A model generated the notes under the pieces. It worked only from the letters and a program-made list of their open reading frames with translations. It was not told where the DNA came from and made no database searches. A program made the translations under genes and the position numbers. Positions 47,070 to 64,000 of a stretch of 64,000 nucleotides of DNA are shown in pieces. Within the stretch, counting starts at the first letter, position 1. Each line of letters begins with the position of its first letter. The stretch lies in IMG/VR virus record IMGVR_UViG_3300036770_003657, positions 124,001 through 188,000 of that record. One strand, written 5' to 3'.

Positions 47070-47522
47070 ATGTGGTACTCTAAAATATTAAAAGATATTA
47101 CTGTATTACCTGATGCTATTGATTACTATACTAACGAGTTAAGTGAAGCTAAACTAGATGCTCGTATAACGGGAAATATTGAAAAGGCAGCTGCCAGCAT
47201 GCCTGGTATAGTAGAACATAGGTTTGGACAATTACAGGAAATTGAAGCAATTTTAGAGTACCTCAATATAGAACTAAGACAACTTAAAAGTCAGCATTTT
47301 CGTAAATATTTAGAAAATTATCAAAGAGCATTGAGTAGTAGGGATTGTGACCGTTATGTAGAAGGTGAATCAGATGTAGTTGATATGGAAAAAATCATCA
47401 ACGAGTTTGCCCTTCTACGTAATAAATGGTTAGGAATCACAAAGGCGTTGGATGTCAAGCAGTGGCAGCTAAGTAATGTAATTAAATTACGAACTGCGGG
47501 AATGGAAGATGCAACATTATGA
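47070..47522 (+). CDS. uvsY: Recombination mediator (UvsY-like)
   Basis: Helical 150-aa protein; YLE.Y.RALSSRD.DRYVEGE and KALDVKQWQLSNVIKLR.AG resemble UvsY; next to uvsX. Confidence 0.7.
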   Translation: MWYSKILKDITVLPDAIDYYTNELSEAKLDARITGNIEKAAASMPGIVEHRFGQLQEIEAILEYLNIELRQLKSQHFRKYLENYQRALSSRDCDRYVEGESDVVDMEKIINEFALLRNKWLGITKALDVKQWQLSNVIKLRTAGMEDATL

Positions 47523-47865
47523 ACAAGTAGATAAGACTTGGGGTTATTATCGTGTATTTTACGAAAATGGTCCTGAAACTAAGGTTAAAGAGTTAGTCTG
47601 CAATCCACATAGCAAATTAAGCCTTCAACGACACTTTGATCGTAAGGAGTTTTGGTTCTTTATGGAAGGTGAAGGATATATTAATACACTTAATAGCAAT
47701 GGTGAACTTGTATGTATGGGACCTTATAAACAGTTTGACACTGCATTTATTGACTACGAAGAATGGCATCAATTAGTTAATGAAGGTGATATACCTATAA
47801 AAATTGTAGAAATACAATATGGGCGCAAATGTATAGAAGAGGACATAGAAAGAAAGGTACTATGA
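47509..47865 (+). CDS. Cupin, mannose-6-phosphate isomerase type II C-terminal-like
   Basis: KTWGYY..KVKEL..P..KLSLQRH..R.EFW..WHQL.N..IVEIQYG..EEDIER. Confidence 0.85.
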   Translation: MQHYEQVDKTWGYYRVFYENGPETKVKELVCNPHSKLSLQRHFDRKEFWFFMEGEGYINTLNSNGELVCMGPYKQFDTAFIDYEEWHQLVNEGDIPIKIVEIQYGRKCIEEDIERKVL

Positions 47866-48209
47866 ACGAAGATCTTAAAAAAGTATTTGAAATAGCTAAT
47901 TATATGACCACTTTAAATCTTCAAAAGAGGGAATTATATGAAGAATTTGAGCAGAGCTGTTATTATCATAAAGATGGCCATACATTTAAAGCTTCAGAAC
48001 AAATGATAACCTTTTTAACTTCATTATTAAATAGAAACTTGGAATCTTTCTTAATTTTGGATAGTAACAATGAGCCTTATAACATTGAAAATATTGACGA
48101 ATTTTTAAAAGATATTATAGCAGTACATACTGAAGCAATGAATGCTTATTATTATAGTTACAAAAAATTAGTGCAGCAAAGAAGTGTTGAATCAATAATT
48201 ACAAAATGA
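47862..48209 (+). CDS. Hypothetical protein (115 aa)
   Basis: SD GAAAGG and ATGA coupling support a start at 47862. Confidence 0.7.
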   Translation: MNEDLKKVFEIANYMTTLNLQKRELYEEFEQSCYYHKDGHTFKASEQMITFLTSLLNRNLESFLILDSNNEPYNIENIDEFLKDIIAVHTEAMNAYYYSYKKLVQQRSVESIITK

Positions 48210-49003
48210 ATAATGGAGTTTTAATTTTTGCTCAAAATGGAAATTTTGATTATGTTAAGCTAGCTGAATTATCTGCACTTAGAGTAAAAGAATACTTGGA
48301 CTTACCAGTTAGCTTAGTAACTAATATTAAGTATCAGAATAAAGATAGTGTTTTTGATAAAATTATTAATATAAAGTCTAAACAGTCGCAAATTAGAAAT
48401 ATACACGATGGAAACAATTCAAATAGAGTTAAATGGCTAAACTTTGATCGTCATTTAAGTTATGAACTTAGCCCTTATGACAAAACTTTAGTTATTGATG
48501 CAGATTATTTAGTTTCTTCAAACAATCTAATGTATTGCTTTGAATCTAATAAAGAATTTCTGATCTATAATAAAGATTATTATTTCATTGAAAATGTATT
48601 TGAAAAGAATTTTAAGTATATTAATGAATTTGGAATACCTTTTTATTGGGCCACTGTATTTTATTTTACTAAGACAGAAAAAAATAAATTATTTTTTAAA
48701 TTTATAGAGTATATTAAGGATAATTGGGACTATTATAGGGTGTTGTATTCAATTATAGATAGTAAGTTTAGGAACGACTTTGCTTTTAGCATAGCAATTA
48801 ATCTATTACATAATCAATTATCAAATAAAGAGTTTGGATTTATTCCTGGTAAGCTATTTTATACAATAGATAAAGATAGTTTAATTATGAATGAAAGTGA
48901 AACTATGGGATTTTATCTTCACAATAACTCTTGTGTTAAGACTAAAGGGTTAGATGTTCATGTAATGAACAAAAAAAGTATAGTTAGGGTATTAAATGAA
49001 TAA
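48206..49003 (+). CDS. Putative nucleotide-sugar transferase (GT-A like)
   Basis: GVLIFAQN..YVKLA..SPYDKTLVIDADY (DxD)..YWATVFYF..RNDFAFSIA. Confidence 0.55.
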   Translation: MNNGVLIFAQNGNFDYVKLAELSALRVKEYLDLPVSLVTNIKYQNKDSVFDKIINIKSKQSQIRNIHDGNNSNRVKWLNFDRHLSYELSPYDKTLVIDADYLVSSNNLMYCFESNKEFLIYNKDYYFIENVFEKNFKYINEFGIPFYWATVFYFTKTEKNKLFFKFIEYIKDNWDYYRVLYSIIDSKFRNDFAFSIAINLLHNQLSNKEFGFIPGKLFYTIDKDSLIMNESETMGFYLHNNSCVKTKGLDVHVMNKKSIVRVLNE

Positions 49004-49814
49004 AGGTCATCTTATTTTTGCCCAAAATTCTTCAATAAATTATGTCAGACAGGCGTATGCTCTTGCTTTGAGTATTAAAAAGTTTAATAAAATCAACAAA
49101 GTCTGTTTAGTAACTAATGATGCAGTTCCGTTAGAGTACATTAAAGCCTTTGATCATATAGTTCCTATACCCTGGGGAGATATGTCATCTAATTCTGAAT
49201 GGAAAATAGAGAATAGATGGAAATTAATATATGCTAGCCCCTTCAAAGAAAATTTAGTTTATGATTCTGACATGATTTTACTGAGTAGCAATGATCATTA
49301 TTGGTATCATTTAGATAGTTATGATATAGCATTAACTCAAAATGTTAGAGATTATAAAGGAAATAAAATAACTTCAAGTAATAATCCTTATAGAAAAGTC
49401 TTCTTTAATAACAATTTACCAGATGTTTATTTTGGCTTACATTATTTTAAAAAAAATAGTATAAGTTTTGAGTTTTACAAATGGTTAGAACACATAATAA
49501 AAAATTGGGACTTATTTTCTCAAGAATTTACTAAAAAATCTAGACAAAAAACTGCTAGTTTAGATGTGGCAAGTTCGCTTGCTGTTAATTTTGGGGATTT
49601 TAAAATTGCTAATGATATATTGTCCTTTGTACATATGAAACCTTTAATACAAGGTTGGGAAATAAGTAATATAGAATCTTGGACAGATCATATAATATAT
49701 GATTTTAATCAGAATTGTGTGTTAAGTATGGCCAATACAATTCAATCAGGAATATTTCATTATACTGATGACAAATTTTTATCAAATGATATCATTAAGT
49801 TCTTAGAGAAGTAA
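48996..49814 (+). CDS. Putative nucleotide-sugar transferase, paralogue of the upstream gene
   Basis: GHLIFAQN..YVRQA..SPFKENLVYDSDM (DxD)..YFGLHYF. Confidence 0.55.
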   Translation: MNKGHLIFAQNSSINYVRQAYALALSIKKFNKINKVCLVTNDAVPLEYIKAFDHIVPIPWGDMSSNSEWKIENRWKLIYASPFKENLVYDSDMILLSSNDHYWYHLDSYDIALTQNVRDYKGNKITSSNNPYRKVFFNNNLPDVYFGLHYFKKNSISFEFYKWLEHIIKNWDLFSQEFTKKSRQKTASLDVASSLAVNFGDFKIANDILSFVHMKPLIQGWEISNIESWTDHIIYDFNQNCVLSMANTIQSGIFHYTDDKFLSNDIIKFLEK

Positions 49815-49815
49815 T

Positions 49816-50349
49816 ATGAATAATGAAATTATATTAGAACCTATTATATTACCTACTCAAGTGTTTTATTTATATTATAATAATGAAGGTTATATTACTG
49901 AGTTATTGAATTATAAAAAAGACACTGGAAATTATATTGAGGTTAGTGATGAATTTGTAGTCAGTTTTAGAGAAAGTAATAAAGATCTATCTAATTTTAA
50001 AGTTGAAATTGATAATAGCTGTAGAATTATTAGGAATGATAATTTATATAATCAACGTTTTTATTTTATAATATATGAAACAGATGATATTACAGATTTA
50101 GTTATTCTTATAGGTAAAAAGGAACTTTTGTTTACATTGTCATCTAACTTAGGATATAATTTACAAGATAGTGCAACATTCTCCTTTTATATAGTAAGTA
50201 AAATTAATCCTAATTTTTTACTAGTTAACATTCCTATTAAGTATGGAGATTTAAAAAAAGGATATAGATTTAAATATAAGTTTGACAACCAAAAAGAAAT
50301 AATAACGACAGTCAAATATTTTAATTCTTATAAAATAAAATATGAGTAA
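49816..50349 (+). CDS. Hypothetical protein (177 aa)
   Basis: Operon-embedded ORF; no recognisable motif. Confidence 0.65.
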   Translation: MNNEIILEPIILPTQVFYLYYNNEGYITELLNYKKDTGNYIEVSDEFVVSFRESNKDLSNFKVEIDNSCRIIRNDNLYNQRFYFIIYETDDITDLVILIGKKELLFTLSSNLGYNLQDSATFSFYIVSKINPNFLLVNIPIKYGDLKKGYRFKYKFDNQKEIITTVKYFNSYKIKYE

Positions 50350-51271
50350 AAAAATAAAGCTAATTGATTGTGATTTAATTTATTTAAGTTACGATGAACC
50401 AAACAAAGAACGCAATTATGCTGATTTGAAGAAAAAATTTCCTTGGGCTAAACGTGTAGATGGGGTGCATGGTAGCGATAGTGCTCATAAGGCCTGTGCT
50501 AGACTGGCTGAAACTGATCGTGTAACTATTATTGATGGTGATAATATCGTTAAACCTGAGCTAATGAATCAAGTTATTGAGTTAATTGATACGGCAGATA
50601 CTAGCATATGTGTTTTAAGTTTTCCTGCACAAAATATTATCAATGGTTTAATATATGGCAACGGTAGTATTAAAAATTGGCCTACACAGTTAGTGTTAGA
50701 TATGCGTACGCATGAAAATGCAGATCCCTCTAATGATAAAACACAGGTAGATTTTTGTTGGGAAATAAAATATCTTCAAATGAATAATTGGATGAGTTGG
50801 GTTCATAATAATTCTAGTCCACATCAAGCATGGAGAGCAGGATTTCGTGAAGGTGTTAAAATGAGCTTGTTAGAAGGATCCAAACCTAGTTTAGATAAAC
50901 CATTTGATAAACAGGTACATTGGAAAAACTATCATAGACTACTAGCTTGGATGAACGTAGGTAGTGATGCAGATAATGGACTATGGGCAATTTACGGGGC
51001 AAGGCTAGGATGTTATATGACCTTGCTAACAGATTGGGATCATTTAAATGTTAGGACCTTTAGTTATCTCAATGATTTATATGCTAGAATTCAACCTTCA
51101 AGTACTGAAGCATTAATATTAGAAATTAGTAGATTGGGAAAGGAGCTTAAGGAAGGTCTTGGTATTCTTACAGGTCCAAGTTTTTTAGATGTAGATCAAT
51201 CTAAATATTTTAAGTCTGTATACACTAATCCACCAAGGCTTAAAAGTGATTGGATAGTAGAAAATGTATGA
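50342..51271 (+). CDS. Putative glycosyltransferase-like protein (DGD motif)
   Basis: LSYDEPN..RVDGVHG..AHKACA..IIDGDN..YGNGSIK..AWRAGFREGVK. Confidence 0.5.
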   Translation: MSKKIKLIDCDLIYLSYDEPNKERNYADLKKKFPWAKRVDGVHGSDSAHKACARLAETDRVTIIDGDNIVKPELMNQVIELIDTADTSICVLSFPAQNIINGLIYGNGSIKNWPTQLVLDMRTHENADPSNDKTQVDFCWEIKYLQMNNWMSWVHNNSSPHQAWRAGFREGVKMSLLEGSKPSLDKPFDKQVHWKNYHRLLAWMNVGSDADNGLWAIYGARLGCYMTLLTDWDHLNVRTFSYLNDLYARIQPSSTEALILEISRLGKELKEGLGILTGPSFLDVDQSKYFKSVYTNPPRLKSDWIVENV

Positions 51272-51959
51272 TATGGTCTTCATAAGTTACTCGGAGCCAA
51301 ATGCAGAAGATAATTGGACAAAATTAAAAACAAGGTTTTCTCTAGCAAAACGTGTTCATGGAGTAAAAGGTATACATCAAGCTCATATATTTGCTGCTAA
51401 AAAAGCGTTAACAAATATGTTTTGGGTTATTGATGGTGATGCTGAAATATTAGACACTTTTGATTTTAATTTTAGAATAAAGCAATATGATACCGTTTAT
51501 GTTTGGCGTAGTCTAAATCCTATTAACGACTTAGAATATGGAAATGGCGGAGTAAAGTTATTACCTAGAACAATGACAATAAATATGGATACTAGTAAAC
51601 CAGATATGACTACTAGTATAAGCAATAAATTTGTTCCTATGCATCAAGTTAGTAATATAACACGATTTAATACAGATGAGTTTAATACATGGAAAAGTGC
51701 TTTTAGAGAATGTGCTAAATTAGCAAGTAAGATTATTGACAGACAAAAAGTAGCTGAAACTGAATATAGATTAGATACTTGGTGTAAAATAGGTAAAGAT
51801 AGAACATATGGCATTTATGCATTGGAAGGTGCTATTCAAGGTAAAGCCTATGGGTTGGAATGCATGTCCAATAAAAGTAATTTATCCTTAATTAACGATT
51901 TTGAATGGCTTCGATCAAGATTTAATTTATATTATGAAACAGAACGAATCAAGCAGTGA
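51264..51959 (+). CDS. Putative glycosyltransferase-like protein, paralogue of the upstream gene
   Basis: ISYSEPN..RVHGVKG..AHIFAA..VIDGDA..YGNGGVK..TWKSAFRECAK. Confidence 0.5.
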   Translation: MYDMVFISYSEPNAEDNWTKLKTRFSLAKRVHGVKGIHQAHIFAAKKALTNMFWVIDGDAEILDTFDFNFRIKQYDTVYVWRSLNPINDLEYGNGGVKLLPRTMTINMDTSKPDMTTSISNKFVPMHQVSNITRFNTDEFNTWKSAFRECAKLASKIIDRQKVAETEYRLDTWCKIGKDRTYGIYALEGAIQGKAYGLECMSNKSNLSLINDFEWLRSRFNLYYETERIKQ

Positions 51960-52872
51960 AATAGATTGTTTTTATGGTTTAGAAGAATACTACAAATATA
52001 TTAGGAGATATAATATTAGTAGCTTCATACATGAATTAATTAATCTTACAATATTAGAAGATCCGTATCCGACTTTAAAAAGATTATTAGTTCAAGCTCA
52101 TAATCTTAAAAGTGAAGAATGGGTATATACAAAAAGTGTAACATTTTTTTTAAAATTATTAAAAAAAGAGTATTCACTAGTCGATTTGGCTAGTGTAGCA
52201 AGAAATTACTTTGAAAATGAAAAACTGTTTAGAATTATTCATGCTTATGAACGTAGTGGGAATGATTTACAAGGAATTGCAGATGGATTGAGTAGAGGTC
52301 AAGTCAAAAGTAAAATTTGGCTGATTAAGGAACTTATTCCTATTAAAAAACATTTTGATAATATACTAGTATTAGCTGGATGGTTTGGACAATTTAAGAT
52401 GTTATACGCTAACAGATGTACATATAAAAAAATGCGTATCATTGATATTGATAAAAATAATTGTAAAATTGGTGATGAAATATTTAATAATCAAGATTTA
52501 CAAGATTATAAAGTTAAAAGTATATGCGGTGATATCAATAATTTAGTATGTCATAAAAATGGGTATGAATTTGAGATAGAAAATTTTAAAACAGAGTCTT
52601 CATATAAGGAAAAATATCTTCCTAACTTAATTATTAATACAAGTTCTGAACATATGACTGAGGAATGGTTTTTTCAACTTAAATCTAAAAAGCTAGAAAG
52701 TAACCCACTAGTAGCTATACAGAGTAATAACTTATTTGATATTCCAGAACATATTAATTGTGTTTATAGTATTAATCATATGAAGAAAAAATTTCCTATG
52801 ACAGAGATATTATTTGAGGGAGAGCTTCAGTTAAAGGGATATAAGCGAGTAATGTTAATAGGAAGACCATGA
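51934..52872 (+). CDS. Class I SAM-dependent methyltransferase-like protein
   Basis: SRGQVKSKIWL..ILVLAGWFG (motif I-like), IIDID (motif II), LIINTSSEH. Start moved from the TTG at 51901 to the ATG at 51934. Confidence 0.6.
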   Translation: MKQNESSSEIDCFYGLEEYYKYIRRYNISSFIHELINLTILEDPYPTLKRLLVQAHNLKSEEWVYTKSVTFFLKLLKKEYSLVDLASVARNYFENEKLFRIIHAYERSGNDLQGIADGLSRGQVKSKIWLIKELIPIKKHFDNILVLAGWFGQFKMLYANRCTYKKMRIIDIDKNNCKIGDEIFNNQDLQDYKVKSICGDINNLVCHKNGYEFEIENFKTESSYKEKYLPNLIINTSSEHMTEEWFFQLKSKKLESNPLVAIQSNNLFDIPEHINCVYSINHMKKKFPMTEILFEGELQLKGYKRVMLIGRP

Positions 52873-53093
52873 TAGATTTAGATAAATTAGAACTGCGTGA
52901 TTTACAAAAGGAATCAGCTAGGGCATTGAGTGTTATGGAAGCTACCAATAATAATATATATAAATACAATATACAAGCTTATCATAACAGTCAAAATTGG
53001 TATAAAGCTGTAATAAAGGATTATATAAACCAATATGGAGATTTACCAAGTAAAACTGGACCTGCTAATTCAATAATACTTATTTTAGACTAA
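52869..53093 (+). CDS. Small hypothetical protein (74 aa)
   Basis: ATGA and TAATG coupling to both neighbours. Confidence 0.65.
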   Translation: MIDLDKLELRDLQKESARALSVMEATNNNIYKYNIQAYHNSQNWYKAVIKDYINQYGDLPSKTGPANSIILILD

Positions 53094-54268: not shown

Positions 54269-55251
54269 AACCTATAGCTATAAATTATGTTGATACTAGA
54301 AGGTATGATACAGTATATATAGATTGGACGTTGGGTAATTTTTGCAATTTTAAATGTAGTTATTGTCCAGATAATTTGCATAATAATTCAAATCCTATGG
54401 TAGAAATTGAAAAGGTAAAAAAATTTGTTAAACTAATGTTTGGTCATTATGCAAAACATCTGAATAAAAAATATTTTGTGTTTAATTTAATGGGCGGTGA
54501 ACCAACACTTTGGAAAAGTATAGAACCATTTATCATATGGGTTAAAGAGTATAGTAAAGATTTAGGAATAGTTTCATATATTGAAGTATTAACAAACGCT
54601 AGTAGAACTTTACGTTGGTGGAATGACTATGTAAAATATTTTGACTTTATAAAAATTACTCATCATACTGAATTCGCTAACCCTATTCATACGAGAACAG
54701 TTGCTGATCTTGCTATAGATAATGGAATAAACGCTACAGTGCAAGTTACTATGATACCTGCATTATGGAATAATTGTATAGAACATTTAGATCAAATTAA
54801 ACAAAGTAAACATGAATTCCAAATTGATGTAAAACCTTTACGTTTAGATTTCGGACCTCATCTATACGATTACACATCAGACCAACTTGCTTTCTTTAAA
54901 AAACTATATAGAAAAAATAACATTAAAAGTAGATTGTCAGGATCAATTGGAATGGGAAGTAAATTTTTATTTCCTGATAATACAGAAAAGCAAATTAGGT
55001 ATCAAGACTTGATTTCTAATAAAGAAAACTCTTGGGTAGACTGGAAATGTTGGGCAGGTTTAGATATACTTACTATAAGATCAGATGGATCTCTTAGAAT
55101 GGGAGGTGCTTGTCTAATGAAAGATAATGGGTTTTTTGATAAAAAAATTACAGATGATGATATTGTATTTAGAATTGACCCTATAATTTGTAAACAACAA
55201 TGGTGTAGTTGCTCACCTGATATGGAAACAAGGAAAGAAAATGTTAGATAA
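54265..55251 (+). CDS. Radical SAM protein with C-terminal Cys cluster
   Basis: CNFKCSYC, MGGEPT; WKCWAG..IRSDG..GGAC..ICKQQWCSC. Confidence 0.9.
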   Translation: MKPIAINYVDTRRYDTVYIDWTLGNFCNFKCSYCPDNLHNNSNPMVEIEKVKKFVKLMFGHYAKHLNKKYFVFNLMGGEPTLWKSIEPFIIWVKEYSKDLGIVSYIEVLTNASRTLRWWNDYVKYFDFIKITHHTEFANPIHTRTVADLAIDNGINATVQVTMIPALWNNCIEHLDQIKQSKHEFQIDVKPLRLDFGPHLYDYTSDQLAFFKKLYRKNNIKSRLSGSIGMGSKFLFPDNTEKQIRYQDLISNKENSWVDWKCWAGLDILTIRSDGSLRMGGACLMKDNGFFDKKITDDDIVFRIDPIICKQQWCSCSPDMETRKENVR

Positions 55252-57813: not shown

Positions 57814-57821
57814 GATAGTTT

Positions 57822-58829
57822 ATGTACGAATCTTTACACGGAGATCCAATAGTTTTTGCTAAAGTAGAAAAGGATTTAAGATTTCTTCATTCTAGATGGC
57901 AAAAAAGTGATACTTATGCTGAACCTCATGAAGGTTATATGATGCATTTAAGAAATCCTGATGTAGTAGACAATATAGCAAAAAACCTTGAACCTGCTAA
58001 GATGTTCACAGATGAACAAAGTTCTTTTAATCGAGATGAGTTATCTTGGCTTTATGGATTTGCTTTTAGTCAATGTTTGAATGTAAGGCATAATGCAAAT
58101 GGAACAATATTTTTGTCCGGTAATTTACATAAAATTGCCGAAAAGTTTATAGATAAGTTATCTAAAATTTTGCCAGGTTGTGAAAATAGTCCTAGTGTAG
58201 CAGGAAATTTTTTAATTACGCCTAGTCAATATGGTCTTCATACAGATAGTACTAGAGAGACAGATTGGATGGATAGTTTAAATAAAATTTCTGTAAATGA
58301 TTCAAGAAGAAGATATGTGCCATGGAGAAATATTCTAATACCAATATGGATAGGGGGAAACCCAGACACTGTAAGTCATGCTGTATTTTTTGATCAGCGT
58401 CATATAGATTTTGCTCATGTTTATCTTCATGGAAGACCTTACGCTAAGGATCCAGCAACTACATACCCTATTGTTTACAATCATTCTGATGTAGTTTTTC
58501 ATAATGAATTAGGAGAAATTATACCTAATGAGAGAAATCTTTTATCTTATGATAAAGAACATCATAAAAAATATTTGTATTATACACCATATAGCAGATT
58601 AACTGGGTTAACACCATCTTTAACTACAGAATGGATACCAGGTAAACCATTTGTTTTTGATGCATTTCAATTACATGCTACTAATAAAGGTACAGAAGTT
58701 GAATATGGGTATAAACATGTAAGTATAAACAAAGAAGGAAAGGAACTCTCATCAAGAATAGAATTTAAGCATAAAACATGGGACGTTAAAATGGGACTTC
58801 TATTAACTTTTTTACGTGAGGTAGTATGA
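57822..58829 (+). CDS. Putative 2OG-Fe(II) oxygenase-like protein
   Basis: HxD (GLHTDS) and distal His (FVFDAFQLHAT) in a DSBH-like spacing. Confidence 0.5.
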   Translation: MYESLHGDPIVFAKVEKDLRFLHSRWQKSDTYAEPHEGYMMHLRNPDVVDNIAKNLEPAKMFTDEQSSFNRDELSWLYGFAFSQCLNVRHNANGTIFLSGNLHKIAEKFIDKLSKILPGCENSPSVAGNFLITPSQYGLHTDSTRETDWMDSLNKISVNDSRRRYVPWRNILIPIWIGGNPDTVSHAVFFDQRHIDFAHVYLHGRPYAKDPATTYPIVYNHSDVVFHNELGEIIPNERNLLSYDKEHHKKYLYYTPYSRLTGLTPSLTTEWIPGKPFVFDAFQLHATNKGTEVEYGYKHVSINKEGKELSSRIEFKHKTWDVKMGLLLTFLREVV

Positions 58830-60028
58830 AATCTAAAACATTTTGTGTTATGCCTTGGAATAGTATTGCTACTAATGCTTCTGGAATTTATAGAGTTTGT
58901 TGCAATAGTACTCCTGGGAAAAACGTAATTAATGATGATAATGGACAACCAACAAAAATTTTTAAAAATAGTCCTAGCCAAATTTGGAACTCTTATACAT
59001 ATAAAAAAATAAGGGCAGAAATGTTATCTAATGTTCGTCCTGAAATGTGTGAAAGATGTTTTAAGGAAGAAGATTCTGGAATCGAATCTGCTAGAATGAA
59101 TTGGAATAAACGTTGGTATAACGAGTCAAAAAATTACGATGTGATAGAAAAAAATATGGACATTCAGTATATAGATTTAAGATTAGGAAATCTATGTAAC
59201 CTAAAATGTAGAATGTGCAATCCTTACAGTAGTAGCCAATGGGTAGATGAATGGAATCAGGTAGTCGATACTGCTGAACTTGTTCCTAATTTTAAAATTT
59301 CGGATGATGAGAGTGTACGTTTATCTAGCCTAGATTGGCCTACTCGTTCTAAAACTTGGGAAAATATTATAGAAATTGCAGATACTATAGAAGAGATATA
59401 TCTAACTGGTGGAGAACCAACTCTTGCTATAGAGCAATATAAACTATTTGAAATTTTGAAACAAAAAAAATTAACAAAGAAAATTAAGTTAAAATATAAT
59501 ACAAATTTAACAAATATCCCTAAAAAAATGATAGATTATTGGAGATATTTTAAGAAGATTCAAATTAATGCTAGTATAGATGCGTTTGCTGATTTAAATC
59601 GTTATATTAGGTTTCCTACTTCATGGGATATGGTAGACAAAAATATAGAAAAATTTGTAAATATGAAAAATGTTGAAGTACAGTTGCACTGTACTGTTCA
59701 AATGTATAATATATTAAAGCTTCATGAATTATTTGAATGGATGAAAAAGTTTCAATCTATAAAACTGTATTTAAATATTTTAAATCATCCAAGATCTATG
59801 AATATTAGAGTCCTACCAAAAGAACTTAAAATTATAGCAGAAGAAAATTTGCAAGATTATTTAGATCTTCCTAAGGTGGAGCAAGTGATAAAATATATGA
59901 ATGATAAGGATGAGAGTGAATTTTTAAATGAATTTTTTAATTACACAATAAAGTTAGACCAATTACGTAAACAAAATCTATTTAACTTGGTACCAGAACT
60001 AGAAAAATATTATGTTCGGAGCGAGTAA
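58826..60028 (+). CDS. Radical SAM protein with N-terminal twitch-like domain
   Basis: CVMPW..SGIYRVCC..CERC precedes DLRLGNLCNLKCRMC; TGGEPT. Confidence 0.9.
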   Translation: MKSKTFCVMPWNSIATNASGIYRVCCNSTPGKNVINDDNGQPTKIFKNSPSQIWNSYTYKKIRAEMLSNVRPEMCERCFKEEDSGIESARMNWNKRWYNESKNYDVIEKNMDIQYIDLRLGNLCNLKCRMCNPYSSSQWVDEWNQVVDTAELVPNFKISDDESVRLSSLDWPTRSKTWENIIEIADTIEEIYLTGGEPTLAIEQYKLFEILKQKKLTKKIKLKYNTNLTNIPKKMIDYWRYFKKIQINASIDAFADLNRYIRFPTSWDMVDKNIEKFVNMKNVEVQLHCTVQMYNILKLHELFEWMKKFQSIKLYLNILNHPRSMNIRVLPKELKIIAEENLQDYLDLPKVEQVIKYMNDKDESEFLNEFFNYTIKLDQLRKQNLFNLVPELEKYYVRSE

Positions 60029-61254
60029 TGAAACATTTGGTTTGTAGTAAAATGTGGACAGATGTTAATATCAATATTCCCACTAAGGAAATTAAAAATT
60101 GTTGTAAACGTCAATCGGCTAAAATTTCCTTAGAAGATTTAAAAACATATGGTAAAAATATCTTCACTAAACACGAGTTATTAGAAAACGATAAAAGATT
60201 TATGATACAGGAAAACAAGTTACCAGACGCTTGTTATGGTTGTAAAATTACATGGCCAAATTCTCTTTGGTCAGTTTGGAACTTATGGAAGGAAAAAGAA
60301 TGGTCTAAAGATGAATTGTATAGACTAATTGATGAAGATAAGGTATACCAAATAGAAATAATGTTAGGTATTACTTGTAATCAAGCCTGTATGTATTGTA
60401 CAGAATATGTAAGTAGTAAATGGGCAGACATAAAAAGAATTGATATAAAGCCTGATGACGAATGGGAAAACCTCGCTTTAACGAATTTATACAATTATAT
60501 AGAGAATGATAGATATAATGATAGCAACTCTATATTATATAATTTTTTAGGAGGAGAGCCTTTTTTAGAACCTAAGATTTTTGAAGTCATTGAAAATTTA
60601 ATTAAAATTCATAAAGATAAAAATGTTCAATATAAAAGAATTAATATAAACATGACTACAAATCTTAATATCAAACCTAAAACTATTGATAGATATTTAG
60701 AAATGGTTTCAGGCAATCGAGAAATTTCTTGGAGTTTAAGTGCTAGTATAGATTCTTTAGGTAAACAAGGTGAGGAAATTAGAGACGGTTTAATTTTTTC
60801 TAGATTTGAGCATAATTTAGAAAAGATTTATGAATCAAATATGTTTACAACTATAAGTTTGTTACCATCTGTAAGTGCTTTAAGTATACCAAATAAGATT
60901 GATTTAATTAAATGGTTTTTTAATTTGTCTTTTAGATATAAAAAACCTAACGAATTTGGACATTCATTTAATATTGCTTCTAATATTGTTACATGGCCTG
61001 ATGCCATGCACCCAGGTATACTCACTGATGAATATAAGTCTGAAATTGACAAATGTATTAATTACATTGATAATTTAGATTCAACTAGTAATACTCAAAA
61101 ATATAAAAACCATCTTATTAATTTACGTAATATAATTGGTACTAAAAGGCAGACAAGTTATTTGGAAAGTTCAAGAAAATGGTATCAAGATCAAGGTAGA
61201 TTAAAAGGAAAAGATTATTTTGAAATTTTTCCGTTTTTAAATGTAATTTTATGA
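60028..61254 (+). CDS. Radical SAM protein with N-terminal twitch-like domain
   Basis: CSKMW..IKNCC..CYGC precedes MLGITCNQACMYC; LGGEPF. Confidence 0.88.
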   Translation: MKHLVCSKMWTDVNINIPTKEIKNCCKRQSAKISLEDLKTYGKNIFTKHELLENDKRFMIQENKLPDACYGCKITWPNSLWSVWNLWKEKEWSKDELYRLIDEDKVYQIEIMLGITCNQACMYCTEYVSSKWADIKRIDIKPDDEWENLALTNLYNYIENDRYNDSNSILYNFLGGEPFLEPKIFEVIENLIKIHKDKNVQYKRININMTTNLNIKPKTIDRYLEMVSGNREISWSLSASIDSLGKQGEEIRDGLIFSRFEHNLEKIYESNMFTTISLLPSVSALSIPNKIDLIKWFFNLSFRYKKPNEFGHSFNIASNIVTWPDAMHPGILTDEYKSEIDKCINYIDNLDSTSNTQKYKNHLINLRNIIGTKRQTSYLESSRKWYQDQGRLKGKDYFEIFPFLNVIL

Positions 61255-62645
61255 GCAATATCTCTATTAATTTTGTTACAGTAAAACAAAATAGATTAGA
61301 CAAGATACTTTTTGTATTTTGGAATGATTATTTTTATAATTCAAAAAAGTATTCTAATGATTTTAATTATGCCAATGACTTCATGCTTATGACACAAATG
61401 CTATCTAATAGCATGTTATATCATAATTATGATAGAATATTATGTTATAATTTAGAAGAAGCTTTAGAATTAGGACGAGCAGCAGGATTTAAACATGCTG
61501 TAATTCAGACTCCAGGGAGTGTTATTAATAAAAATTTTGATAAAATAATTTTAGATTATGTTAAAAGTAAGGACTATTTTTTAATTGGTCATATTTTAGA
61601 TGGTAAGCCTAAGAACAAATACTTATATATACACGAACAACTGTTTGTTATAAATTTAGAAAAAATATTAAATTTTGATTATATTATTGACAAGGAATGT
61701 AAGACAGAAAGAACATTTAATAATTATATTAGAAGTGAGTATAATTTTCATGATGATTATACACCTTTATGGATTAAGAAAACAAATGGCAGTATTACAA
61801 CAAAAAATTATAATTGGTCTGCTTCATATTTGAGTTATGGACTTGAAGTAGATGGGCTTTTCACATTTAGTCATAATATAAGATCCAGTAAACTGCATAT
61901 GTATCCTGAAAATAAAAACCATAAAGAAACATGGTATAGTGAGATCAATGAAAATAATCAATTAAAAAATATTATAGATAATGCATATAAAGTTGATAGA
62001 ACTAATCATATTTTTAATAATGAGAATTTTTCTAAAATATCAGCAAAAGCAGTTAGTTCTAAAATAGATACGTTAGTCTTGCCTGCTAGTGGATTTTATT
62101 CAGTTCATGCTTTTTCTCATTTTAGGCCTACTAAAATAATTTATTATGATATAGACAATGTTACTCTTAAGGCTAGAAAGTTAATTAATGAAACTTGGAA
62201 TGGTGTTGATAATATTGACTTCGGCGATCTTTCTGTAAATATTTTTCAAGATAAAAATGTCAACAATATACAACTTGTTGATAATGAATGGATTAAAACT
62301 AGAGAAGAAGCTTTAGAAATATGGAAAGATTTTCAAAAAGTTGACAAAGTGTACCATAATATTGATATTATAGAAGATTATGATAAACTTTTAGGAATTT
62401 TGCCTGATAATAATATGTTTATTTGGTTAAATAGTATATATACTTATAGTACAAATATTTGGAACCATAGACCTAGTAAGATATTTAAATCTTATTTTTC
62501 TCTTGTATATAGACTTATTGATTTCAAAAGTCAAATTTGGATAGATGTAAAAGAGCCTATGGGACAATATCGTTGTTTTGAAGTACATAAATATAGTCCA
62601 GATGCTGTAGCTATGTCTTATGCTAATTATAAAAAATTTATATGA
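61251..62645 (+). CDS. Hypothetical 464-aa protein, possible Rossmann/methyltransferase-like C-terminal half
   Basis: ATGA-coupled ORF; LVLPASG..IIYYDID segment. Confidence 0.5.
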   Translation: MSNISINFVTVKQNRLDKILFVFWNDYFYNSKKYSNDFNYANDFMLMTQMLSNSMLYHNYDRILCYNLEEALELGRAAGFKHAVIQTPGSVINKNFDKIILDYVKSKDYFLIGHILDGKPKNKYLYIHEQLFVINLEKILNFDYIIDKECKTERTFNNYIRSEYNFHDDYTPLWIKKTNGSITTKNYNWSASYLSYGLEVDGLFTFSHNIRSSKLHMYPENKNHKETWYSEINENNQLKNIIDNAYKVDRTNHIFNNENFSKISAKAVSSKIDTLVLPASGFYSVHAFSHFRPTKIIYYDIDNVTLKARKLINETWNGVDNIDFGDLSVNIFQDKNVNNIQLVDNEWIKTREEALEIWKDFQKVDKVYHNIDIIEDYDKLLGILPDNNMFIWLNSIYTYSTNIWNHRPSKIFKSYFSLVYRLIDFKSQIWIDVKEPMGQYRCFEVHKYSPDAVAMSYANYKKFI

Positions 62646-63184
62646 TTATTGCTGGTAATAAAAACTATGGGCTCGCTAAAGAATTATATAAATATTATCC
62701 TGATGCCTTTTTTGCTAGTAGAACTACAGGATTTGATTTAACTAATTCTACTGATCAAAAAAAGTTAGCAGATTTAGTTTTGGAAAACAAAGTTTTTATT
62801 AATTGTAGTGCTTTATGGAAGTTTAATCAAACTGTTTTATTAGACATAGTTTATAAAAAATGTTTAGAAAATAGTCATAGACCTTACATAATAAATGTTG
62901 GATCAACAACAGATCGTGTAAAAAAAGGGGGGTCTTGGTTATATAATGCTGAAAAGAAAGCATTGAGAGATTATAGTAATACTTTAGGTATAAATGGAGT
63001 ATGGGATAAGGGACCGAAAGTGACCTTAATAAGTTTTGGGTCATTATCAAATGTACAGCAAAAGCATCCTAGTAGAAAATGTATTCCTATTGATATTGCT
63101 GCTTCCTATATAAAATGGATTTTAGAACAGCCTGAAAGTTTATGCATAAATGAAATAAGTATTGACCCGGTACAGTTTATATGA
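62642..63184 (+). CDS. Short-chain dehydrogenase/reductase-like protein
   Basis: IIAGNKNYGLA, FINCSA, IINVGST, catalytic YxxxK (YNAEK), VTLISFG. Confidence 0.75.
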   Translation: MIIAGNKNYGLAKELYKYYPDAFFASRTTGFDLTNSTDQKKLADLVLENKVFINCSALWKFNQTVLLDIVYKKCLENSHRPYIINVGSTTDRVKKGGSWLYNAEKKALRDYSNTLGINGVWDKGPKVTLISFGSLSNVQQKHPSRKCIPIDIAASYIKWILEQPESLCINEISIDPVQFI

Positions 63185-64000
63185 AAATTAAAATAGGAAT
63201 ATTATTTAATGAACTAAATGTTGATAAGGAAATACTTTTTGTAAGGAATTATCTAGAAAATACATTAAGAGCATTCAATACAGATTCTTTTTTTTGGCAA
63301 AAAATTTCTGATATAGAAGAATCAGTAGACTATTTATTAGTTGTTAAAAATGATTTTGTCATTATAAATGCTGATTTATTTGTTCAAAATTTGATAAATT
63401 TATGTGATAATTCTACTTATGAAACAGAAGAGTTTGTATTTACTAAAAAAAATAATTCTGTAGAAACGAGCAAAAAGTTAGAATTATATTATTCCAGTAC
63501 TTATCTTGCATATGATAGATTCAAAAGAGAGTATGACGGTCACGGTAGTAAATTTTTTTTAAAATATTGGGCGTATAATTCTGAAGTTATACCTTATCAA
63601 ATTCCACCACGAACAGATTGCTTGCTAGTTATAGGTGCAGGATTATTGCCTTTGGCTGCTATATCGCATTTAGAAAATCCTGCTACAATAATTATAATTG
63701 ATCATAATAAAAATTGCATTGATTTTCAAAAATTTTTAATAAACAATTTTGATTACATTAAGAATAGTAATTCTTACCACAATTTAGTTGATAACTATAC
63801 AATAGAAAATAGACAAGATTATTGTAATATCAAAAATAATAATAATTTAGAAGTTATTTTAAAAAATTTAGATAAAATACGGAAAAGATTAAATGATAGT
63901 AATATTTTATATTTTTATAATGATATTACTGAACCAAATTTAGAAATATTAGATATTATAAGAAAATCTAATAACCCATATGTATATTTTAGTAATGTAT
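63181..64000 (+). CDS. Partial ORF running off the window, SAM-methyltransferase-like
   Basis: Translated by hand from the ATG at 63181 (ATGA overlap), no stop up to 64000; LLVIGAGLL..IIIIDHN motif I/II-like. Absent from the supplied ORF track. Confidence 0.6.
   Translation, partial: MKIKIGILFNELNVDKEILFVRNYLENTLRAFNTDSFFWQKISDIEESVDYLLVVKNDFVIINADLFVQNLINLCDNSTYETEEFVFTKKNNSVETSKKLELYYSSTYLAYDRFKREYDGHGSKFFLKYWAYNSEVIPYQIPPRTDCLLVIGAGLLPLAAISHLENPATIIIIDHNKNCIDFQKFLINNFDYIKNSNSYHNLVDNYTIENRQDYCNIKNNNNLEVILKNLDKIRKRLNDSNILYFYNDITEPNLEILDIIRKSNNPYVYFSNV

What the first reader, a model, noticed from the sequence alone, without database searches (positions are those of the whole stretch)
47509..64000. 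At least 16.5 kb of AT-rich, tightly coupled modification genes attached to the recombination module
Seen: 19 same-strand ORFs, nearly all joined by ATGA/TAATG or short overlaps, with no terminator noticed. Spot counts give 22-25% GC in 60-mers at 48361 and 49981, against 38-48% in uvsX. Content is a cupin, four GT-like genes, three MTase-like genes, six radical SAM enzymes, an oxygenase-like gene and an SDR; it continues past the window. Inference: a horizontally assembled biosynthetic island making an unusual glycan or protein/DNA modification.
Basis: partly seen in the sequence, partly recalled or inferred. Interest (0 to 1): 0.75.

Follow-up and report, generated by a model that had tools for sequence, protein, structure and literature searches.

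The report
Hypervariable phage glycosyltransferase and radical-SAM island
A 400-kb aquatic jumbo phage carries a 19.9-kb block of 22 tightly packed genes (four sugar-transferring enzymes, seven radical SAM enzymes, oxygenases, methylases); about 18 kb of it differs sharply between otherwise near-identical phages, its core is shared by hundreds of uncultured phages, and its product, most likely a heavily tailored sugar coat, has never been identified.

Summary
From 47509 to window-equivalent 67372, 22 same-strand ORFs are joined by overlaps or gaps of at most 31 nt, with no excess of terminators. GC is 28.6% against 37.0% for the rest of the 399,796-bp genome.

The content calls are mostly right. 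There is one cupin. Four genes have a GT-A fold: two GT8-like and two from an unnamed GT2-like family. There are six radical SAM genes in the window and a seventh beyond it; three score as N-terminal-twitch NF033640 members and a fourth falls just short. There are two 2OG oxygenases, one firm methyltransferase with others tentative, and a weak SDR.

"Horizontally assembled" is only partly right. The core order 06-07-08-09-10...13 recurs in most of 80 fetched IMG/VR loci (at least 557 exist). A short version sits in the cultured Ralstonia phage RsoM2USA.

Against a relative with 96-98% identical flanks, identity drops at about 47,900 to 60-83%, with gene gains and losses.

Best reading (about 0.5): a cytoplasmic pathway that builds a glycan from host sugars and tailors it with radical SAM enzymes, under diversifying selection. 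The acceptor is unresolved. Protein or peptide modification and DNA modification remain rivals.

The parts
47509..47865 (+). ORF01, a 118-aa cupin of the mannose-6-phosphate-isomerase C-terminal type. It belongs to the conserved left flank, not the variable part.
   Evidence: PF01050 E 7.7e-19; TIGR01479 C-terminal region; 97% identical to L008; found in only 1 of 80 related loci.
47829..48209 (+). ORF02, 126 aa, unknown function. It is the first gene of the variable island and travels with ORF03/04.
   Evidence: No Pfam, PHROG or NCBIfam hit; homologues in 12 of 80 loci and in RsoM2USA; identity to L008 falls to 63% here.
48206..49814 (+). ORF03 (48206-49003) and ORF04 (48996-49814): paralogous GT8-like retaining GT-A glycosyltransferases.
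   Evidence: AF2 model of ORF04 has pLDDT 93.2. Top 50 Foldseek PDB hits are glycogenin, UGGT, LARGE1, a GT8 protein and GlyE, at E from 1e-7. The family profile hits glycogenin at E 0.04, and the DxD motif is invariant. No Pfam hit in any member.
49816..50349 (+). ORF05, 177 aa, unknown function and poorly conserved.
   Evidence: No family hit; homologues in 4 of 80 loci.
50342..51959 (+). ORF06 (50342-51271) and ORF07 (51264-51959): paralogous GT-A-fold glycosyltransferases of a large unnamed viral family. They are part of the cassette core.
   Evidence: AF2 model has pLDDT 92.6. Foldseek hits include PcManGT, K4CP, RmlT, PBCV-1 A64R and SunS (E from 3e-4), named GT2 clusters, and the phage Che8 GT. 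The aspartates of IDGDN/VDGDA (D65, D67) are conserved. PF00535 scores 19.1 bits, below its cut-off. Present in 69 of 80 loci. At least 7,903 database clusters, none with a Pfam domain.
51901..52872 (+). ORF08: class I SAM-methyltransferase fold, in a virus-only family. The real start is probably the ATG at 51934. Part of the cassette core.
   Evidence: Atlas: nearest clusters are viral, and the structural neighbours are Methyltransf_11/25/31 families at TM 0.54-0.65. Present in 68 of 80 loci. First ATG found.
52869..53093 (+). ORF09: a 74-aa protein conserved evenly along its length and translationally coupled to ORF10. Its role is unknown.
   Evidence: Alignment A7 has 75% mean column identity with no variable core. 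Present in 48 of 80 loci. No family hit. The complex prediction with ORF10 gave no answer.
53093..54268 (+). ORF10: radical SAM enzyme with a C-terminal twitch-like Cys cluster. Part of the cassette core.
   Evidence: PF04055 E 7e-10. CxxxCxxC at residue 19. Invariant C288, C307, C308, C375 and C379. Present in 78 of 80 loci.
54265..55251 (+). ORF11: a radical SAM enzyme that varies between relatives and has no counterpart in L008.
   Evidence: PF04055 scores 27.2 bits, just under its cut-off. CxxxCxxC at residue 27. No alignment to L008.
55241..57813 (+). ORF12 (55241-56413) and ORF13 (56410-57813): N-terminal-twitch radical SAM enzymes of family NF033640. ORF13 is the conserved anchor of the cassette.
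   Evidence: NF033640 scores 243.8 and 424.6 bits against a cut-off of 170. ORF13 orthologues at 54-87% identity lie in all 80 loci, at least 557 IMG/VR loci match, and 3,677 database proteins reach E <= 1e-5.
57822..58829 (+). ORF14: 2OG-Fe(II) oxygenase, DUF6445-like. Accessory.
   Evidence: Atlas feature and structure neighbours are 2OG-FeII_Oxy_3/5 and DUF6445 families. The sequence has an HxD (LHTDS) and a distal His (QLHAT). Present in 10 of 80 loci.
58826..61254 (+). ORF15 (58826-60028) and ORF16 (60028-61254): further N-terminal-twitch radical SAM paralogues.
   Evidence: NF033640 scores 381.2 bits for ORF15 and 152 bits for ORF16, the latter below the cut-off of 170. The paralogue alignment A1 shows shared Cys positions.
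61251..62645 (+). ORF17: a 464-aa two-domain protein in a virus-only family. The N-terminal part may be GT-A-like and the C-terminal part Rossmann-like. The MTase-like call is tentative.
   Evidence: Atlas: nearest clusters are viral and unnamed. Structural matches are weak: GT2/GT8 at TM 0.35-0.37, and DUF7790 at TM 0.58 measured by the hit. Present in 8 of 80 loci.
62642..63184 (+). ORF18: a 180-aa short SDR-like Rossmann protein.
   Evidence: YNAEK matches the YxxxK motif. The NCBIfam SDR hit is E 0.0014, 18 bits. Present in 16 of 80 loci at 34-80% identity.
63181..64000 (+). ORF19 (515 aa), which runs out of the window to window-equivalent 64728 (L002:181-1728). It has an N-terminal Rossmann-like part and a C-terminal Asp/Asn beta-hydroxylase-type 2OG oxygenase. 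Beyond the window follow ORF20 (Methyltransf_24, L002:1725-2459), ORF21 (unknown, L002:2428-3135) and ORF22 (radical SAM, L002:3167-4372), then thyX on the - strand.
   Evidence: PF05118 E 3.7e-8, PF13578 at 26.1 bits (cut-off 26.3), PF04055 E 1.5e-12, and Thy1 E 1.7e-43. ORF19-21 have no counterpart in L008. ORF22 is 93% identical to L008 and has 4,717 database homologues, the best 120 at 80-93% identity.

Best explanation
The island is a soluble, cytoplasmic pathway that builds and then chemically diversifies a glycan.

Proposed steps:
- Four GT-A glycosyltransferases (ORF03/04 GT8-like, ORF06/07 GT2-like) assemble a short oligosaccharide from the host's own nucleotide sugars. The acceptor is available in the cytoplasm.
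- A SAM methyltransferase (ORF08, perhaps also 17, 19 and 20), 2OG oxygenases (ORF14, ORF19), a short SDR-like protein (ORF18) and a set of single-auxiliary-cluster (twitch-type) radical SAM enzymes (ORF10-13, 15, 16) then tailor the sugars in place. Likely reactions are oxidation, epimerisation, deoxygenation or methylation at unactivated carbons.
- The core (06-07-08-09-10-13) is kept across phages. The tailoring set is reshuffled by recombination, so closely related phages make different products, much as at a serotype locus.

I favour a virion protein as acceptor, giving a glycan coat that changes how hosts, defences or grazers see the particle. The acceptor is not established.

What is shown: gene families, folds, motifs, packing, conservation and hypervariability. 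What is inferred: sugar chemistry for the radical SAM enzymes, use of host NDP-sugars, the acceptor, and the selective force.
For: Enzyme families.
- Four GT-A folds with conserved DxD motifs.
- ORF20 is a Methyltransf_24 (TylF-type) hit. ORF17's nearest named viral clusters carry HtrL_YibB, TylF, GT2, GT8 or GT25 domains.
- All seven radical SAM proteins have CxxxCxxC, and none has the full SPASM CX2CX5CX3C motif. By my own knowledge, most characterised twitch enzymes (BtrN, HygY, BlsE, MoaA) act on sugars or nucleotides. BlsE and MoaA are among the PDB profile hits.

What is missing.
- No island protein has a clear membrane-spanning segment (one borderline hydrophobic stretch, in ORF19's Rossmann-like part), and no match to an initiating transferase, flippase, polymerase or ligase family turned up.
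- The genome has no sugar nucleotidyltransferase.

Context in cells. NF033640 genes are rare in bacteria (over the family cut-off in 3 of 301 Bacteroidota). In the loci examined they sit beside an MTase-GT2 fusion, a GT-C, a polysaccharide deacetylase, arrays of 2OG oxygenases and T9SS surface proteins.

Conservation and variability.
- Syntenic core in 48-80 of 80 loci.
- 1-12 radical SAM genes per locus, median 7.
- A sharp identity break against L008 and in metagenome contigs.

Precedents. Pelagimyophage hypervariable regions with GT8 genes and radical SAM cassettes (PMC7029224). Virus-encoded capsid glycosylation by GT-A enzymes (PBCV-1 A64R and phage Che8 GTs appear among the fold hits).
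Against: - No sugar-specific enzyme was found: no aminotransferase, 4,6-dehydratase, nucleotidyltransferase or acetyltransferase.
- The GT2-like assignment of ORF06/07 rests on weak fold matches (E about 3e-4, TM 0.3-0.5) and a sub-threshold Pfam hit.
- The nearest solved sequence relatives of the N-twitch profile are TigE (peptide cyclopropyl synthase), GDGT-MAS (lipid) and SkfB (peptide), not sugar enzymes.
- Accessory genes seen in other copies of the cassette also suit protein, peptide or nucleobase chemistry: Asp/Asn beta-hydroxylase-like, nitroreductase-like and PP-loop ATPase-like.
- The island lies in the replication/nucleotide module (gp32, uvsX, thyX), not the structural module.
- No acceptor was identified.
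Confidence: 0.5

Rival explanations
1. The island modifies a protein or peptide, in the manner of RiPP or proteusin pathways. The radical SAM, 2OG hydroxylase and methyltransferase enzymes act on amino-acid side chains, and the GTs add sugars to the product, as in glycocins or mycofactocin. The substrate would be either the small conserved ORF09 or a phage structural protein. In this phage one candidate is the 6000-aa (Gly-Val/Ile-Gln)n collagen-like protein at 4515-22517.
For: - The N-twitch profile's best solved relatives are TigE (Ile to methyl-cyclopropylglycine in repeat peptides; 8VPO, E 3.5e-8) and SkfB.
- The order GT-GT-MTase-small protein-rSAM (06-07-08-09-10) recalls mycofactocin genes (small peptide, rSAM-SPASM, GT2, MTase); this comparison is from my own knowledge.
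- PF05118 Asp/Asn beta-hydroxylase domains occur in ORF19 and in 8 other loci. Nitroreductase-like genes occur in 13 loci.
- SunS and ThuS S-glycosyltransferases are among the fold hits for ORF06.
- A giant collagen-like ORF with 1,194 G-X-Y triplets lies 25 kb upstream on the same strand. The relative G304 also has giant collagen-like ORFs near its cassette.
Against: - ORF09 is conserved evenly along its whole length, with no leader/core pattern. There is no room for unannotated small ORFs, since gaps are at most 31 nt.
- No RRE or peptidase was detected.
- The GYW motif and the full SPASM motif that mark cyclopropyl synthases are absent from all seven enzymes. The mycofactocin maturase model scores 26.6 bits against a cut-off of 265.
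- (G[VI]Q)4 is absent from five large cassette-bearing contigs. Any collagen repeat is absent from four of them, including a complete 328-kb genome.
- The ORF09-ORF10 complex prediction gave no answer.
Confidence: 0.2
2. The island hypermodifies the phage DNA. A base is derivatised, then glycosylated by the GT-A enzymes and further tailored, which protects the genome from host nucleases.
For: - The island sits between gp32/uvsX and thyX. thyX directly follows or is embedded in the cassette in several divergent loci: L062, L067, L082, L085 and L086.
- From my own knowledge, T4 places its DNA beta-glucosyltransferase beside uvsX.
- Phage GT-A enzymes that glycosylate 5hmC, and thousands of such clusters, have been described (10.1101/2023.12.21.572611).
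- 2OG oxygenases are present in the island.
- A PP-loop ATPase-like family, of a type that often acts on nucleobases, occurs in 33 related loci.
- Hypervariability would suit an arms race with restriction systems.
Against: - The genome has no ThyA-family hydroxymethylase and no C5 cytosine methyltransferase.
- No island protein hits Tet_JBP in the Pfam scans.
- The 2OG oxygenases are accessory (ORF14 in 10 of 80 loci), whereas the GTs are core.
- The GT fold neighbours are protein, polysaccharide and teichoic-acid transferases, not JGT or TarP-like DNA enzymes with the R...DDD...EDY/F motifs.
- No DpdA- or QueC/D/E-type match appeared among the island proteins scanned.
Confidence: 0.13
3. The island alters the host's own surface polysaccharide (O-antigen, capsule or LPS core) during infection. 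This would block superinfection or slow adsorption of progeny, as proposed for pelagimyophage glycosyltransferases.
For: - GT8 is a common LPS-core family, and this is the reading given for the pelagimyophage GT8 and radical SAM hypervariable region (PMC7029224).
- In bacteria, NF033640 genes lie near surface-glycan genes.
- Viral clusters related to ORF17 carry HtrL_YibB domains.
Against: - No clear membrane protein, no lipid-carrier transferase, flippase, polymerase or ligase match, and no Gtr-type genes.
- A lytic jumbo phage gains little from seroconversion.
- The same core occurs in phages whose GC content ranges from 27% to 53%. These presumably infect very different hosts with different surface glycans.
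Confidence: 0.12

Closest known systems
Pelagimyophage host-recognition hypervariable cluster (GT8 glycosyltransferases plus radical SAM cassettes; Zaragoza-Solas et al. 2020, PMC7029224), and the T4-like marine genome with 12 radical SAM genes (Nishimura et al. 2017, PMC5332604)
   Same: An uncultured aquatic myovirus, a hypervariable region, GT8-type transferases, and radical SAM genes gained and lost as cassettes. Function is uncharacterised in both.
   Different: In pelagimyophages the region lies in the structural module with the tail fibres. Here it lies between uvsX and thyX in a 400-kb Rak2/Atu_ph07-like jumbo phage. Those papers do not describe the conserved core order found here, the N-terminal-twitch family or the unnamed ORF06/07 GT-A family. 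Whether the genes are orthologous was not tested: the phage-collection search with ORF13 listed no pelagiphage.
Virus-encoded virion glycosylation (chlorovirus PBCV-1 A64R and partners; mycobacteriophage Che8 glycosyltransferases)
   Same: Soluble virus-encoded GT-A enzymes that use host nucleotide sugars and work without the host's membrane-bound glycosylation route. Both appear among the fold matches of ORF06.
   Different: Sequence identity is about 12% and TM 0.3-0.4. To my knowledge those systems have no radical SAM enzymes. Glycosylation of this phage's virion has not been shown.
Phage DNA glycan hypermodification clusters (C5-MT or ThyS, plus 5mYOX, plus GT; Pyle et al., 10.1101/2023.12.21.572611)
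   Same: Phage gene clusters with several GT-A enzymes next to DNA-metabolism genes, variable between phages.
   Different: The precursor-forming enzymes were not found: ThyA-family and C5-MT are absent. That paper's text does not mention radical SAM enzymes (0 occurrences).
Twitch-domain radical SAM enzymes (NCBIfam NF033640, N-terminal twitch subfamily)
   Same: ORF12, 13 and 15 score well above the family cut-off. They have CxxxCxxC plus a second conserved Cys set for one auxiliary cluster.
   Different: No member of NF033640 has a known substrate as far as I could find (no paper cites the accession). Here the genes occur as 4 paralogues per island, and related loci carry up to 12 radical SAM genes of all types.
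Ralstonia phage RsoM2USA genes 354-347 (cultured jumbo phage)
   Same: The gene order is 02-03-04-x-06-(N-twitch rSAM)-07-08, at 23-45% protein identity.
   Different: It has only one radical SAM gene and lacks ORF09/10, the 2OG oxygenases and the SDR-like gene. All of its genes are annotated as hypothetical.

Membership tests
Radical SAM superfamily (PF04055) | CxxxCxxC motif that binds the SAM-cleaving 4Fe-4S cluster | tested here: met
   The motif is present once in each of ORF10, 11, 12, 13, 15, 16 and 22.
Radical SAM superfamily (PF04055) | Score above the Pfam gathering cut-off (29.5 bits) | tested here: met
   ORF10 39.7, ORF12 46.0, ORF13 41.5, ORF15 54.0, ORF22 48.5 bits. ORF11 (27.2) and ORF16 (25.3) fall just below the cut-off but carry the motif.
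NF033640 N-terminal-twitch radical SAM | Whole-protein score above the curated cut-off (170 bits), covering the N-terminal Cys-rich domain | tested here: met
   ORF13 424.6, ORF15 381.2, ORF12 243.8 bits, all full length. ORF16 scores 152, below the cut-off, so it is a divergent relative and is not filed as a member. ORF10, 11 and 22 match only the core.
NF033640 N-terminal-twitch radical SAM | Conserved Cys ligands for one auxiliary cluster, placed N-terminal to the radical SAM core | tested here: met
   C11, C29, C30, C93 and C96 are invariant in the four paralogues. The full SPASM motif is absent. Cluster binding itself cannot be tested here.
GT8 (glycogenin/LgtC-type retaining GT-A) | GT-A fold whose closest matches are GT8 structures | tested here: met
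   ORF04 model has pLDDT 93. The top Foldseek PDB hits are glycogenin, at E from 1.4e-7 and TM 0.42-0.52.
GT8 (glycogenin/LgtC-type retaining GT-A) | DxD metal and nucleotide-sugar binding motif | tested here: met
   D90 and D92 (ORF04 numbering) are invariant across 31 sequences of ORF03/04.
GT8 (glycogenin/LgtC-type retaining GT-A) | Sequence-profile membership (Pfam PF01501) | tested here: not met
   None of 16 family members hits any GT Pfam model. The profile against PDB sequences gives only E 0.04. The proteins are therefore GT8-like by fold and are not filed as GT8 members.
GT2 / GT-A inverting transferases | GT-A fold with DxD, and a Pfam PF00535 score above cut-off | tested here: inconclusive
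   Fold matches are to GT2 enzymes at E 3e-4 to 1e-7. Of the two aspartates, D67 is invariant and D65 is at least 90% conserved. PF00535 scores 19.1 bits against a cut-off of 23.3. Nucleotidyltransferases of the same fold also appear among the hits.
Phage DNA glycan hypermodification cluster (Pyle et al.) | An enzyme that makes the 5-hydroxymethyl pyrimidine handle: a ThyA-family hydroxymethylase, or a C5-MT plus a TET-like 5mYOX | tested here: not met
   PF00303 and PF00145 are absent from the whole genome, with positive controls ringing. The Tet_JBP genome search was uninformative because no control rang, but no island protein hit it in the Pfam scans.
RiPP biosynthetic cluster | A precursor peptide with a conserved leader and a variable or repeat core, plus a recognition element or peptidase | tested here: inconclusive
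   The only small ORF (ORF09) is conserved evenly along its length. No RRE or peptidase family hit was found. No dedicated RRE finder was available.
Radical SAM cyclopropyl synthases (TvgB/TigE) | Gly-Tyr-Trp motif ligating auxiliary cluster I, and a full SPASM domain | tested here: not met
   Neither GYW nor CX2CX5CX3C occurs in any of the seven proteins. The defining feature is taken from PMC10878394.
O-antigen or capsule assembly, or seroconversion loci | Membrane components: an initiating polyprenyl-phosphate transferase, Wzx/Wzy or ABC transporter, GtrA/B/C | tested here: not met
   Maximum 19-residue hydropathy is below 1.6 in all island proteins except ORF19, where the segment (1.79) is a Rossmann-like beta strand. 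No such Pfam family was hit.

The most novel reading that the evidence does not exclude
Large aquatic phages carry a widespread, so far uncharacterised locus that works like a serotype locus. A conserved trio of unnamed GT-A transferases, a methyltransferase and two anchor radical SAM enzymes builds a scaffold on a virion component. A rapidly exchanged set of N-terminal-twitch radical SAM enzymes and oxygenases then rewrites it after assembly. In this way rare sugars, or modified residues on fibres such as this phage's 6000-aa (Gly-Val-Gln)n collagen-like protein, could be made without any dedicated nucleotide-sugar pathway. That would give NF033640 its first function and reveal a new route to glycan diversity.
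Probability: 0.3. Interest if true: 0.85.

Novelty: new variant of a known kind. Interest (0 to 1): 0.62.

Why it matters
Phage-encoded glycosylation is known for DNA, for a few virions and for host O-antigen, and hypervariable islands are known in marine myoviruses. This particular cassette has no known product, yet its parts are very common:
- ORF06-type proteins: at least 7,903 database clusters, none with a Pfam domain.
- ORF13: 3,677 homologues at E <= 1e-5.
- ORF22: 4,717 homologues at E <= 1e-5.

The sharp identity break between near-identical phages implies strong diversifying selection on the product. That product is therefore likely to matter for host range, defence evasion or particle survival.

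A cultured carrier (RsoM2USA) makes the question testable now. It could also assign a first function to the N-terminal-twitch radical SAM family.

Tried and rejected
- Near-identity DNA search of the island against 50,697 phage records found no match.
- PHROGs found nothing for ten unknown ORFs.
- Profile searches of ORF06 and ORF08 against PDB sequences gave nothing meaningful.
- Single-sequence PDB searches with ORF13, ORF10 and ORF22 gave only weak core hits or none.
- The genome-contig scan with the paralogue alignment failed. With ORF13 alone it gave one weak locus.
- The ORF09 + ORF10 complex prediction scored 0.00, which is no evidence either way.
- Collagen co-occurrence was rejected as a general link. 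(G[VI]Q)4 occurs in 0 of 5 large cassette contigs and Pfam Collagen in 1 of 5.
- Cyclopropyl-synthase membership was rejected on motifs.
- Prokaryotic viperin was rejected for ORF11 and ORF22: 39-40 bits against a cut-off of 180, N-terminal core only.
- The mycofactocin maturase model was rejected for ORF10: 26.6 bits against 265.
- There are no direct or inverted repeats of 12 nt or more shared by the two island borders.
- The moraphage lineage paper (PMC12619734) concerns different phages.
- The TET/JBP genome search was uninformative because no control genome rang.

Full report
**Where the window lies.** The window is bases 124001-188000 of a 399,796-bp IMG/VR virus record that CheckV rates 100% complete. 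Genome GC is 36.6%. Its UvsX (45777-46835) is 59-70% identical to those of Rak2/Atu_ph07/Phosso/CBB-type jumbo myoviruses. The sequence is held almost whole by one subsurface metagenome and in part by freshwater, lake and aquaculture metagenomes. The host is unknown.

**The observation.**
- From 47509 onward all long ORFs are on the + strand.
- The block continues past the window for four more ORFs to window-equivalent 67372. There it overlaps thyX tail to tail. That makes 22 ORFs in 19.9 kb.
- Eighteen of 21 junctions are overlaps, and the three gaps are 1, 8 and 31 nt.
- Terminator-like hairpins are no more frequent than in shuffled sequence, and the single + strand one is intragenic.
- The two spot GC values reproduce (0.25 and 0.22). 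The island has 28.6% GC against 37.0% for the rest of the genome.

**What the low GC means.** All three codon positions are lower in the island. Its codon usage is in the most deviant 5% of 21-gene blocks. Three points weaken the reading that the island is foreign:
- GC3 of about 0.18 is shared by the neighbouring 100-160 kb, which holds core genes. The difference in total GC there comes from amino-acid composition.
- Another island at 300-316 kb is equally deviant.
- Across the 58 related loci with enough flank to compare, the cassette's GC (27-53% over all loci) follows that phage's own GC, with a median difference of 0.6 points.

**Gene content.**

| ORF | Assignment | Evidence |
|---|---|---|
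| 01 | Cupin, PMI C-terminal type | PF01050 E 8e-19 |
| 03, 04 | Paralogous GT8-like GT-A transferases | AF2 model of ORF04 pLDDT 93. Its best PDB fold matches are glycogenin and other GT8/GT24-type retaining transferases, at E from 1e-7. DxD invariant. No Pfam model matches any member. |
| 06, 07 | Paralogous GT-A fold, GT2-like, unnamed family | AF2 model of ORF06 pLDDT 92.6. It matches GT2-type enzymes more weakly, among them PBCV-1 A64R, the SunS/ThuS S-glycosyltransferases, RmlT and the phage Che8 transferase. At least 7,903 database clusters, none with a Pfam domain. |
| 08 | Class I methyltransferase fold | |
| 10, 11, 12, 13, 15, 16, 22 | Radical SAM, all with CxxxCxxC | |
| 12, 13, 15 | NF033640 members (N-terminal twitch) | 244-425 bits against a cut-off of 170 |
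| 16 | Divergent NF033640 relative | 152 bits, below cut-off |
| 14 | 2OG oxygenase, DUF6445-like | |
| 19 | C-terminal Asp/Asn beta-hydroxylase domain | |
| 20 | Borderline Methyltransf_24 | |
| 17 | Two-domain, virus-only family; MTase call tentative | |
| 18 | Weak SDR-like | |
| 02, 05, 09, 21 | Unknown | |

ORF10 carries the same type of Cys cluster as the NF033640 proteins, but at its C-terminus. None of the seven radical SAM proteins has the full SPASM motif. No island protein has a clear membrane segment.

**The cassette elsewhere.** A scan of IMG/VR with the four N-twitch paralogues found at least 557 loci encoding a relative of ORF13. The best 80 loci are 54-87% identical to it. Mapping all island proteins onto these loci shows a recurring order: (02-03-04)-06-07-08-09-10-[variable radical SAM genes]-13-[variable]-(18)-22, often followed by thyX.

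| ORF | Loci with a homologue (of 80) |
|---|---|
| 06 | 69 |
| 07 | 69 |
| 08 | 68 |
| 09 | 48 |
| 10 | 78 |
| 13 | 80 |
| 22 | 42 |

The number of radical SAM genes per locus runs from 1 to 12. Other copies of the cassette carry accessory families that this island lacks: a PP-loop ATPase-like protein (33 loci), further rSAM-SPASM genes, nitroreductase-like genes (13 loci) and Asp/Asn hydroxylase-like genes (8 loci).

Among cultured phages only RsoM2USA has a version of the cassette: 02-03-04-x-06-rSAM-07-08, its genes 354-347. Vibrio phage K566 has an unrelated cluster of distant radical SAM genes.

**Hypervariability.** L008 is a 23-kb contig of a very close relative.
- Left flank proteins are nearly identical: UvsX 99%, the two following ORFs 100% and 98%, and the cupin 97%.
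- Island proteins are only 23-88% identical. ORF11 and ORFs 19-21 have no counterpart.
- On the right, ORF22 is 93% and ThyX 91% identical.
- At the DNA level identity is 96-98% up to about 47,900. It then falls within one 300-nt step to 69%, stays at 60-83% across the island, and is 82-91% on the right.

Contigs from four metagenomes show the same pattern. Depth is high over gp32-uvsX-cupin, collapses at about 47,900, and partly recovers at ORF06. One 8.2-kb contig is 96.5% identical up to 47,907 and 82-88% identical beyond.

The variable island proper is therefore about 47,866-66,135 (ORF02-ORF21). No repeats mark its borders. The pattern fits old, divergent alleles exchanged by homologous recombination in conserved flanks, as at bacterial surface-antigen loci. 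That comparison is my inference.

**What it does.** The firmest statement is that this is a set of soluble enzymes with four glycosyltransferase folds plus methyl, oxygen and radical chemistry. It has no lipid-carrier or export machinery, and the genome has no sugar-nucleotide synthesis. That fits a glycan assembled in the cytoplasm from host NDP-sugars and then tailored in place.

From my own knowledge, most characterised single-auxiliary-cluster radical SAM enzymes oxidise, epimerise or decarboxylate sugars or act on nucleotides (BtrN, HygY, BlsE, MoaA). BlsE and MoaA are among the profile's PDB hits.

In bacteria the NF033640 family is rare: it scores over the family cut-off in 3 of 301 sampled Bacteroidota, always in tandem copies. 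In the loci examined it lies beside an MTase-GT2 fusion, a GT-C, a polysaccharide deacetylase, arrays of PhyH/WelO5 oxygenases and T9SS surface proteins.

A conserved scaffold-building core plus an exchangeable tailoring set would explain both the synteny and the variability. I put this at about 0.5.

**Rivals.**
- *Protein or peptide modification (0.2).* This is kept alive by the top PDB sequence relatives (TigE, SkfB), the Asp/Asn hydroxylase domains, and the mycofactocin-like order GT-GT-MTase-small protein-rSAM. Against it: ORF09 is conserved evenly along its length, no recognition element or peptidase was found, and the motifs that define cyclopropyl synthases are absent.
- *DNA hypermodification (0.13).* The position next to uvsX and thyX and the hypervariability favour it. 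However, the genome lacks a ThyA-family hydroxymethylase and a C5 methyltransferase, the oxygenases are not core, and the GT neighbours are not the DNA-acting type.
- *Host surface conversion (0.12).* This lacks any membrane component. The core is also shared by phages of very different GC content, which presumably infect very different hosts.

**A candidate acceptor that did not generalise.** The window also holds a 6000-aa ORF (4515-22517) with 1,194 collagen-like triplets, 86% of them GVQ or GIQ. It is an attractive substrate for hydroxylases, transferases and Val/Ile-directed radical enzymes. The relative G304 also has giant collagen-like ORFs about 25-35 kb from its cassette. However, four of five large cassette-bearing contigs, including a complete 328-kb genome, have no collagen repeat. 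It stays a lineage-specific possibility only.

**Novelty.** Two papers have noted GT8 genes and radical SAM cassettes in marine T4-like phages, without any assigned function. No paper cites NF033640. I did not find the following described anywhere: the conserved core order, the unnamed ORF06/07 family, the N-twitch paralogue arrays, the exact recombination boundary, and the occurrence in a Rak2-like jumbo phage and in cultured RsoM2USA. I class it as a new variant of a known kind, namely phage hypervariable glycosylation islands. Whether it is something more depends on the unknown product.

Noticed in passing
window 4515-22517 (+): A single 6000-aa ORF with 29 collagen-like runs. It has 1,194 G-X-Y triplets: 68% GVQ, 18% GIQ, and Gln at position Y in 95.5%. 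The runs are separated by roughly 55-aa Trp/Tyr-rich modules. This accounts for the 44-50% GC and strong G-skew of this part of the window.
   Followed up: partly
genome 103124-123172 (+), ending just before the window; genome 52843-67248 (-) = L003:2843-17248: Two more giant ORFs of 6682 aa and 4801 aa. The second is AT-rich (28-29% GC) and lies next to a 362-aa GPQ/GEQ collagen-like ORF (genome 51752-52840, - strand).
   Followed up: no
genome 300-318 kb (L004): A second AT-rich island (27-31% GC, GC3 0.19) with codon usage as deviant as the island studied here. Its small genes lie on mixed strands, and its content was not examined.
   Followed up: no
L102:2072-3429 (-) = genome 385072-386429: The genome's eighth radical SAM gene (289 aa, STM4011-like, weak) lies next to a 170-aa ORF with an HNH/IscB-like nuclease domain.
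   Followed up: no
L087-L091 (Flavobacterium MAG contig, 7.6 kb): Four NF033640 radical SAM genes in tandem on one short contig of a bacterial MAG. The contig could be a mis-binned phage fragment or a bacterial island.
   Followed up: partly
L099:2613-8034 (Bacteroidota chromosome, G079): Six consecutive PhyH/WelO5-type 2OG oxygenase genes plus a methyltransferase lie beside two N-twitch radical SAM genes. Nearby is a T9SS-sorted protein with an endosialidase-chaperone domain.
   Followed up: no
L062, L067, L082, L085, L086: In divergent, GC-richer phages thyX lies directly downstream of the ORF13 orthologue on the same strand, in some cases inside the cassette. The linkage with thyX recurs across divergent loci and is unexplained.
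   Followed up: partly
L002:3167-4372 (window-equivalent 66167-67372): ORF22, a 401-aa radical SAM protein, is unusually conserved: the best 120 of 4,717 database homologues are 80-93% identical. JGI labels several of them 'organic radical activating enzyme'. It may belong with thyX and nucleotide metabolism rather than with the island.
   Followed up: partly
window 42415-44616 (+) and 44682-45725 (+): A 733-aa ORF with no Pfam match lies upstream of a gp32-like gene. The gp32-like gene is listed with a TTG start and scores just under the Pfam cut-off.
   Followed up: no
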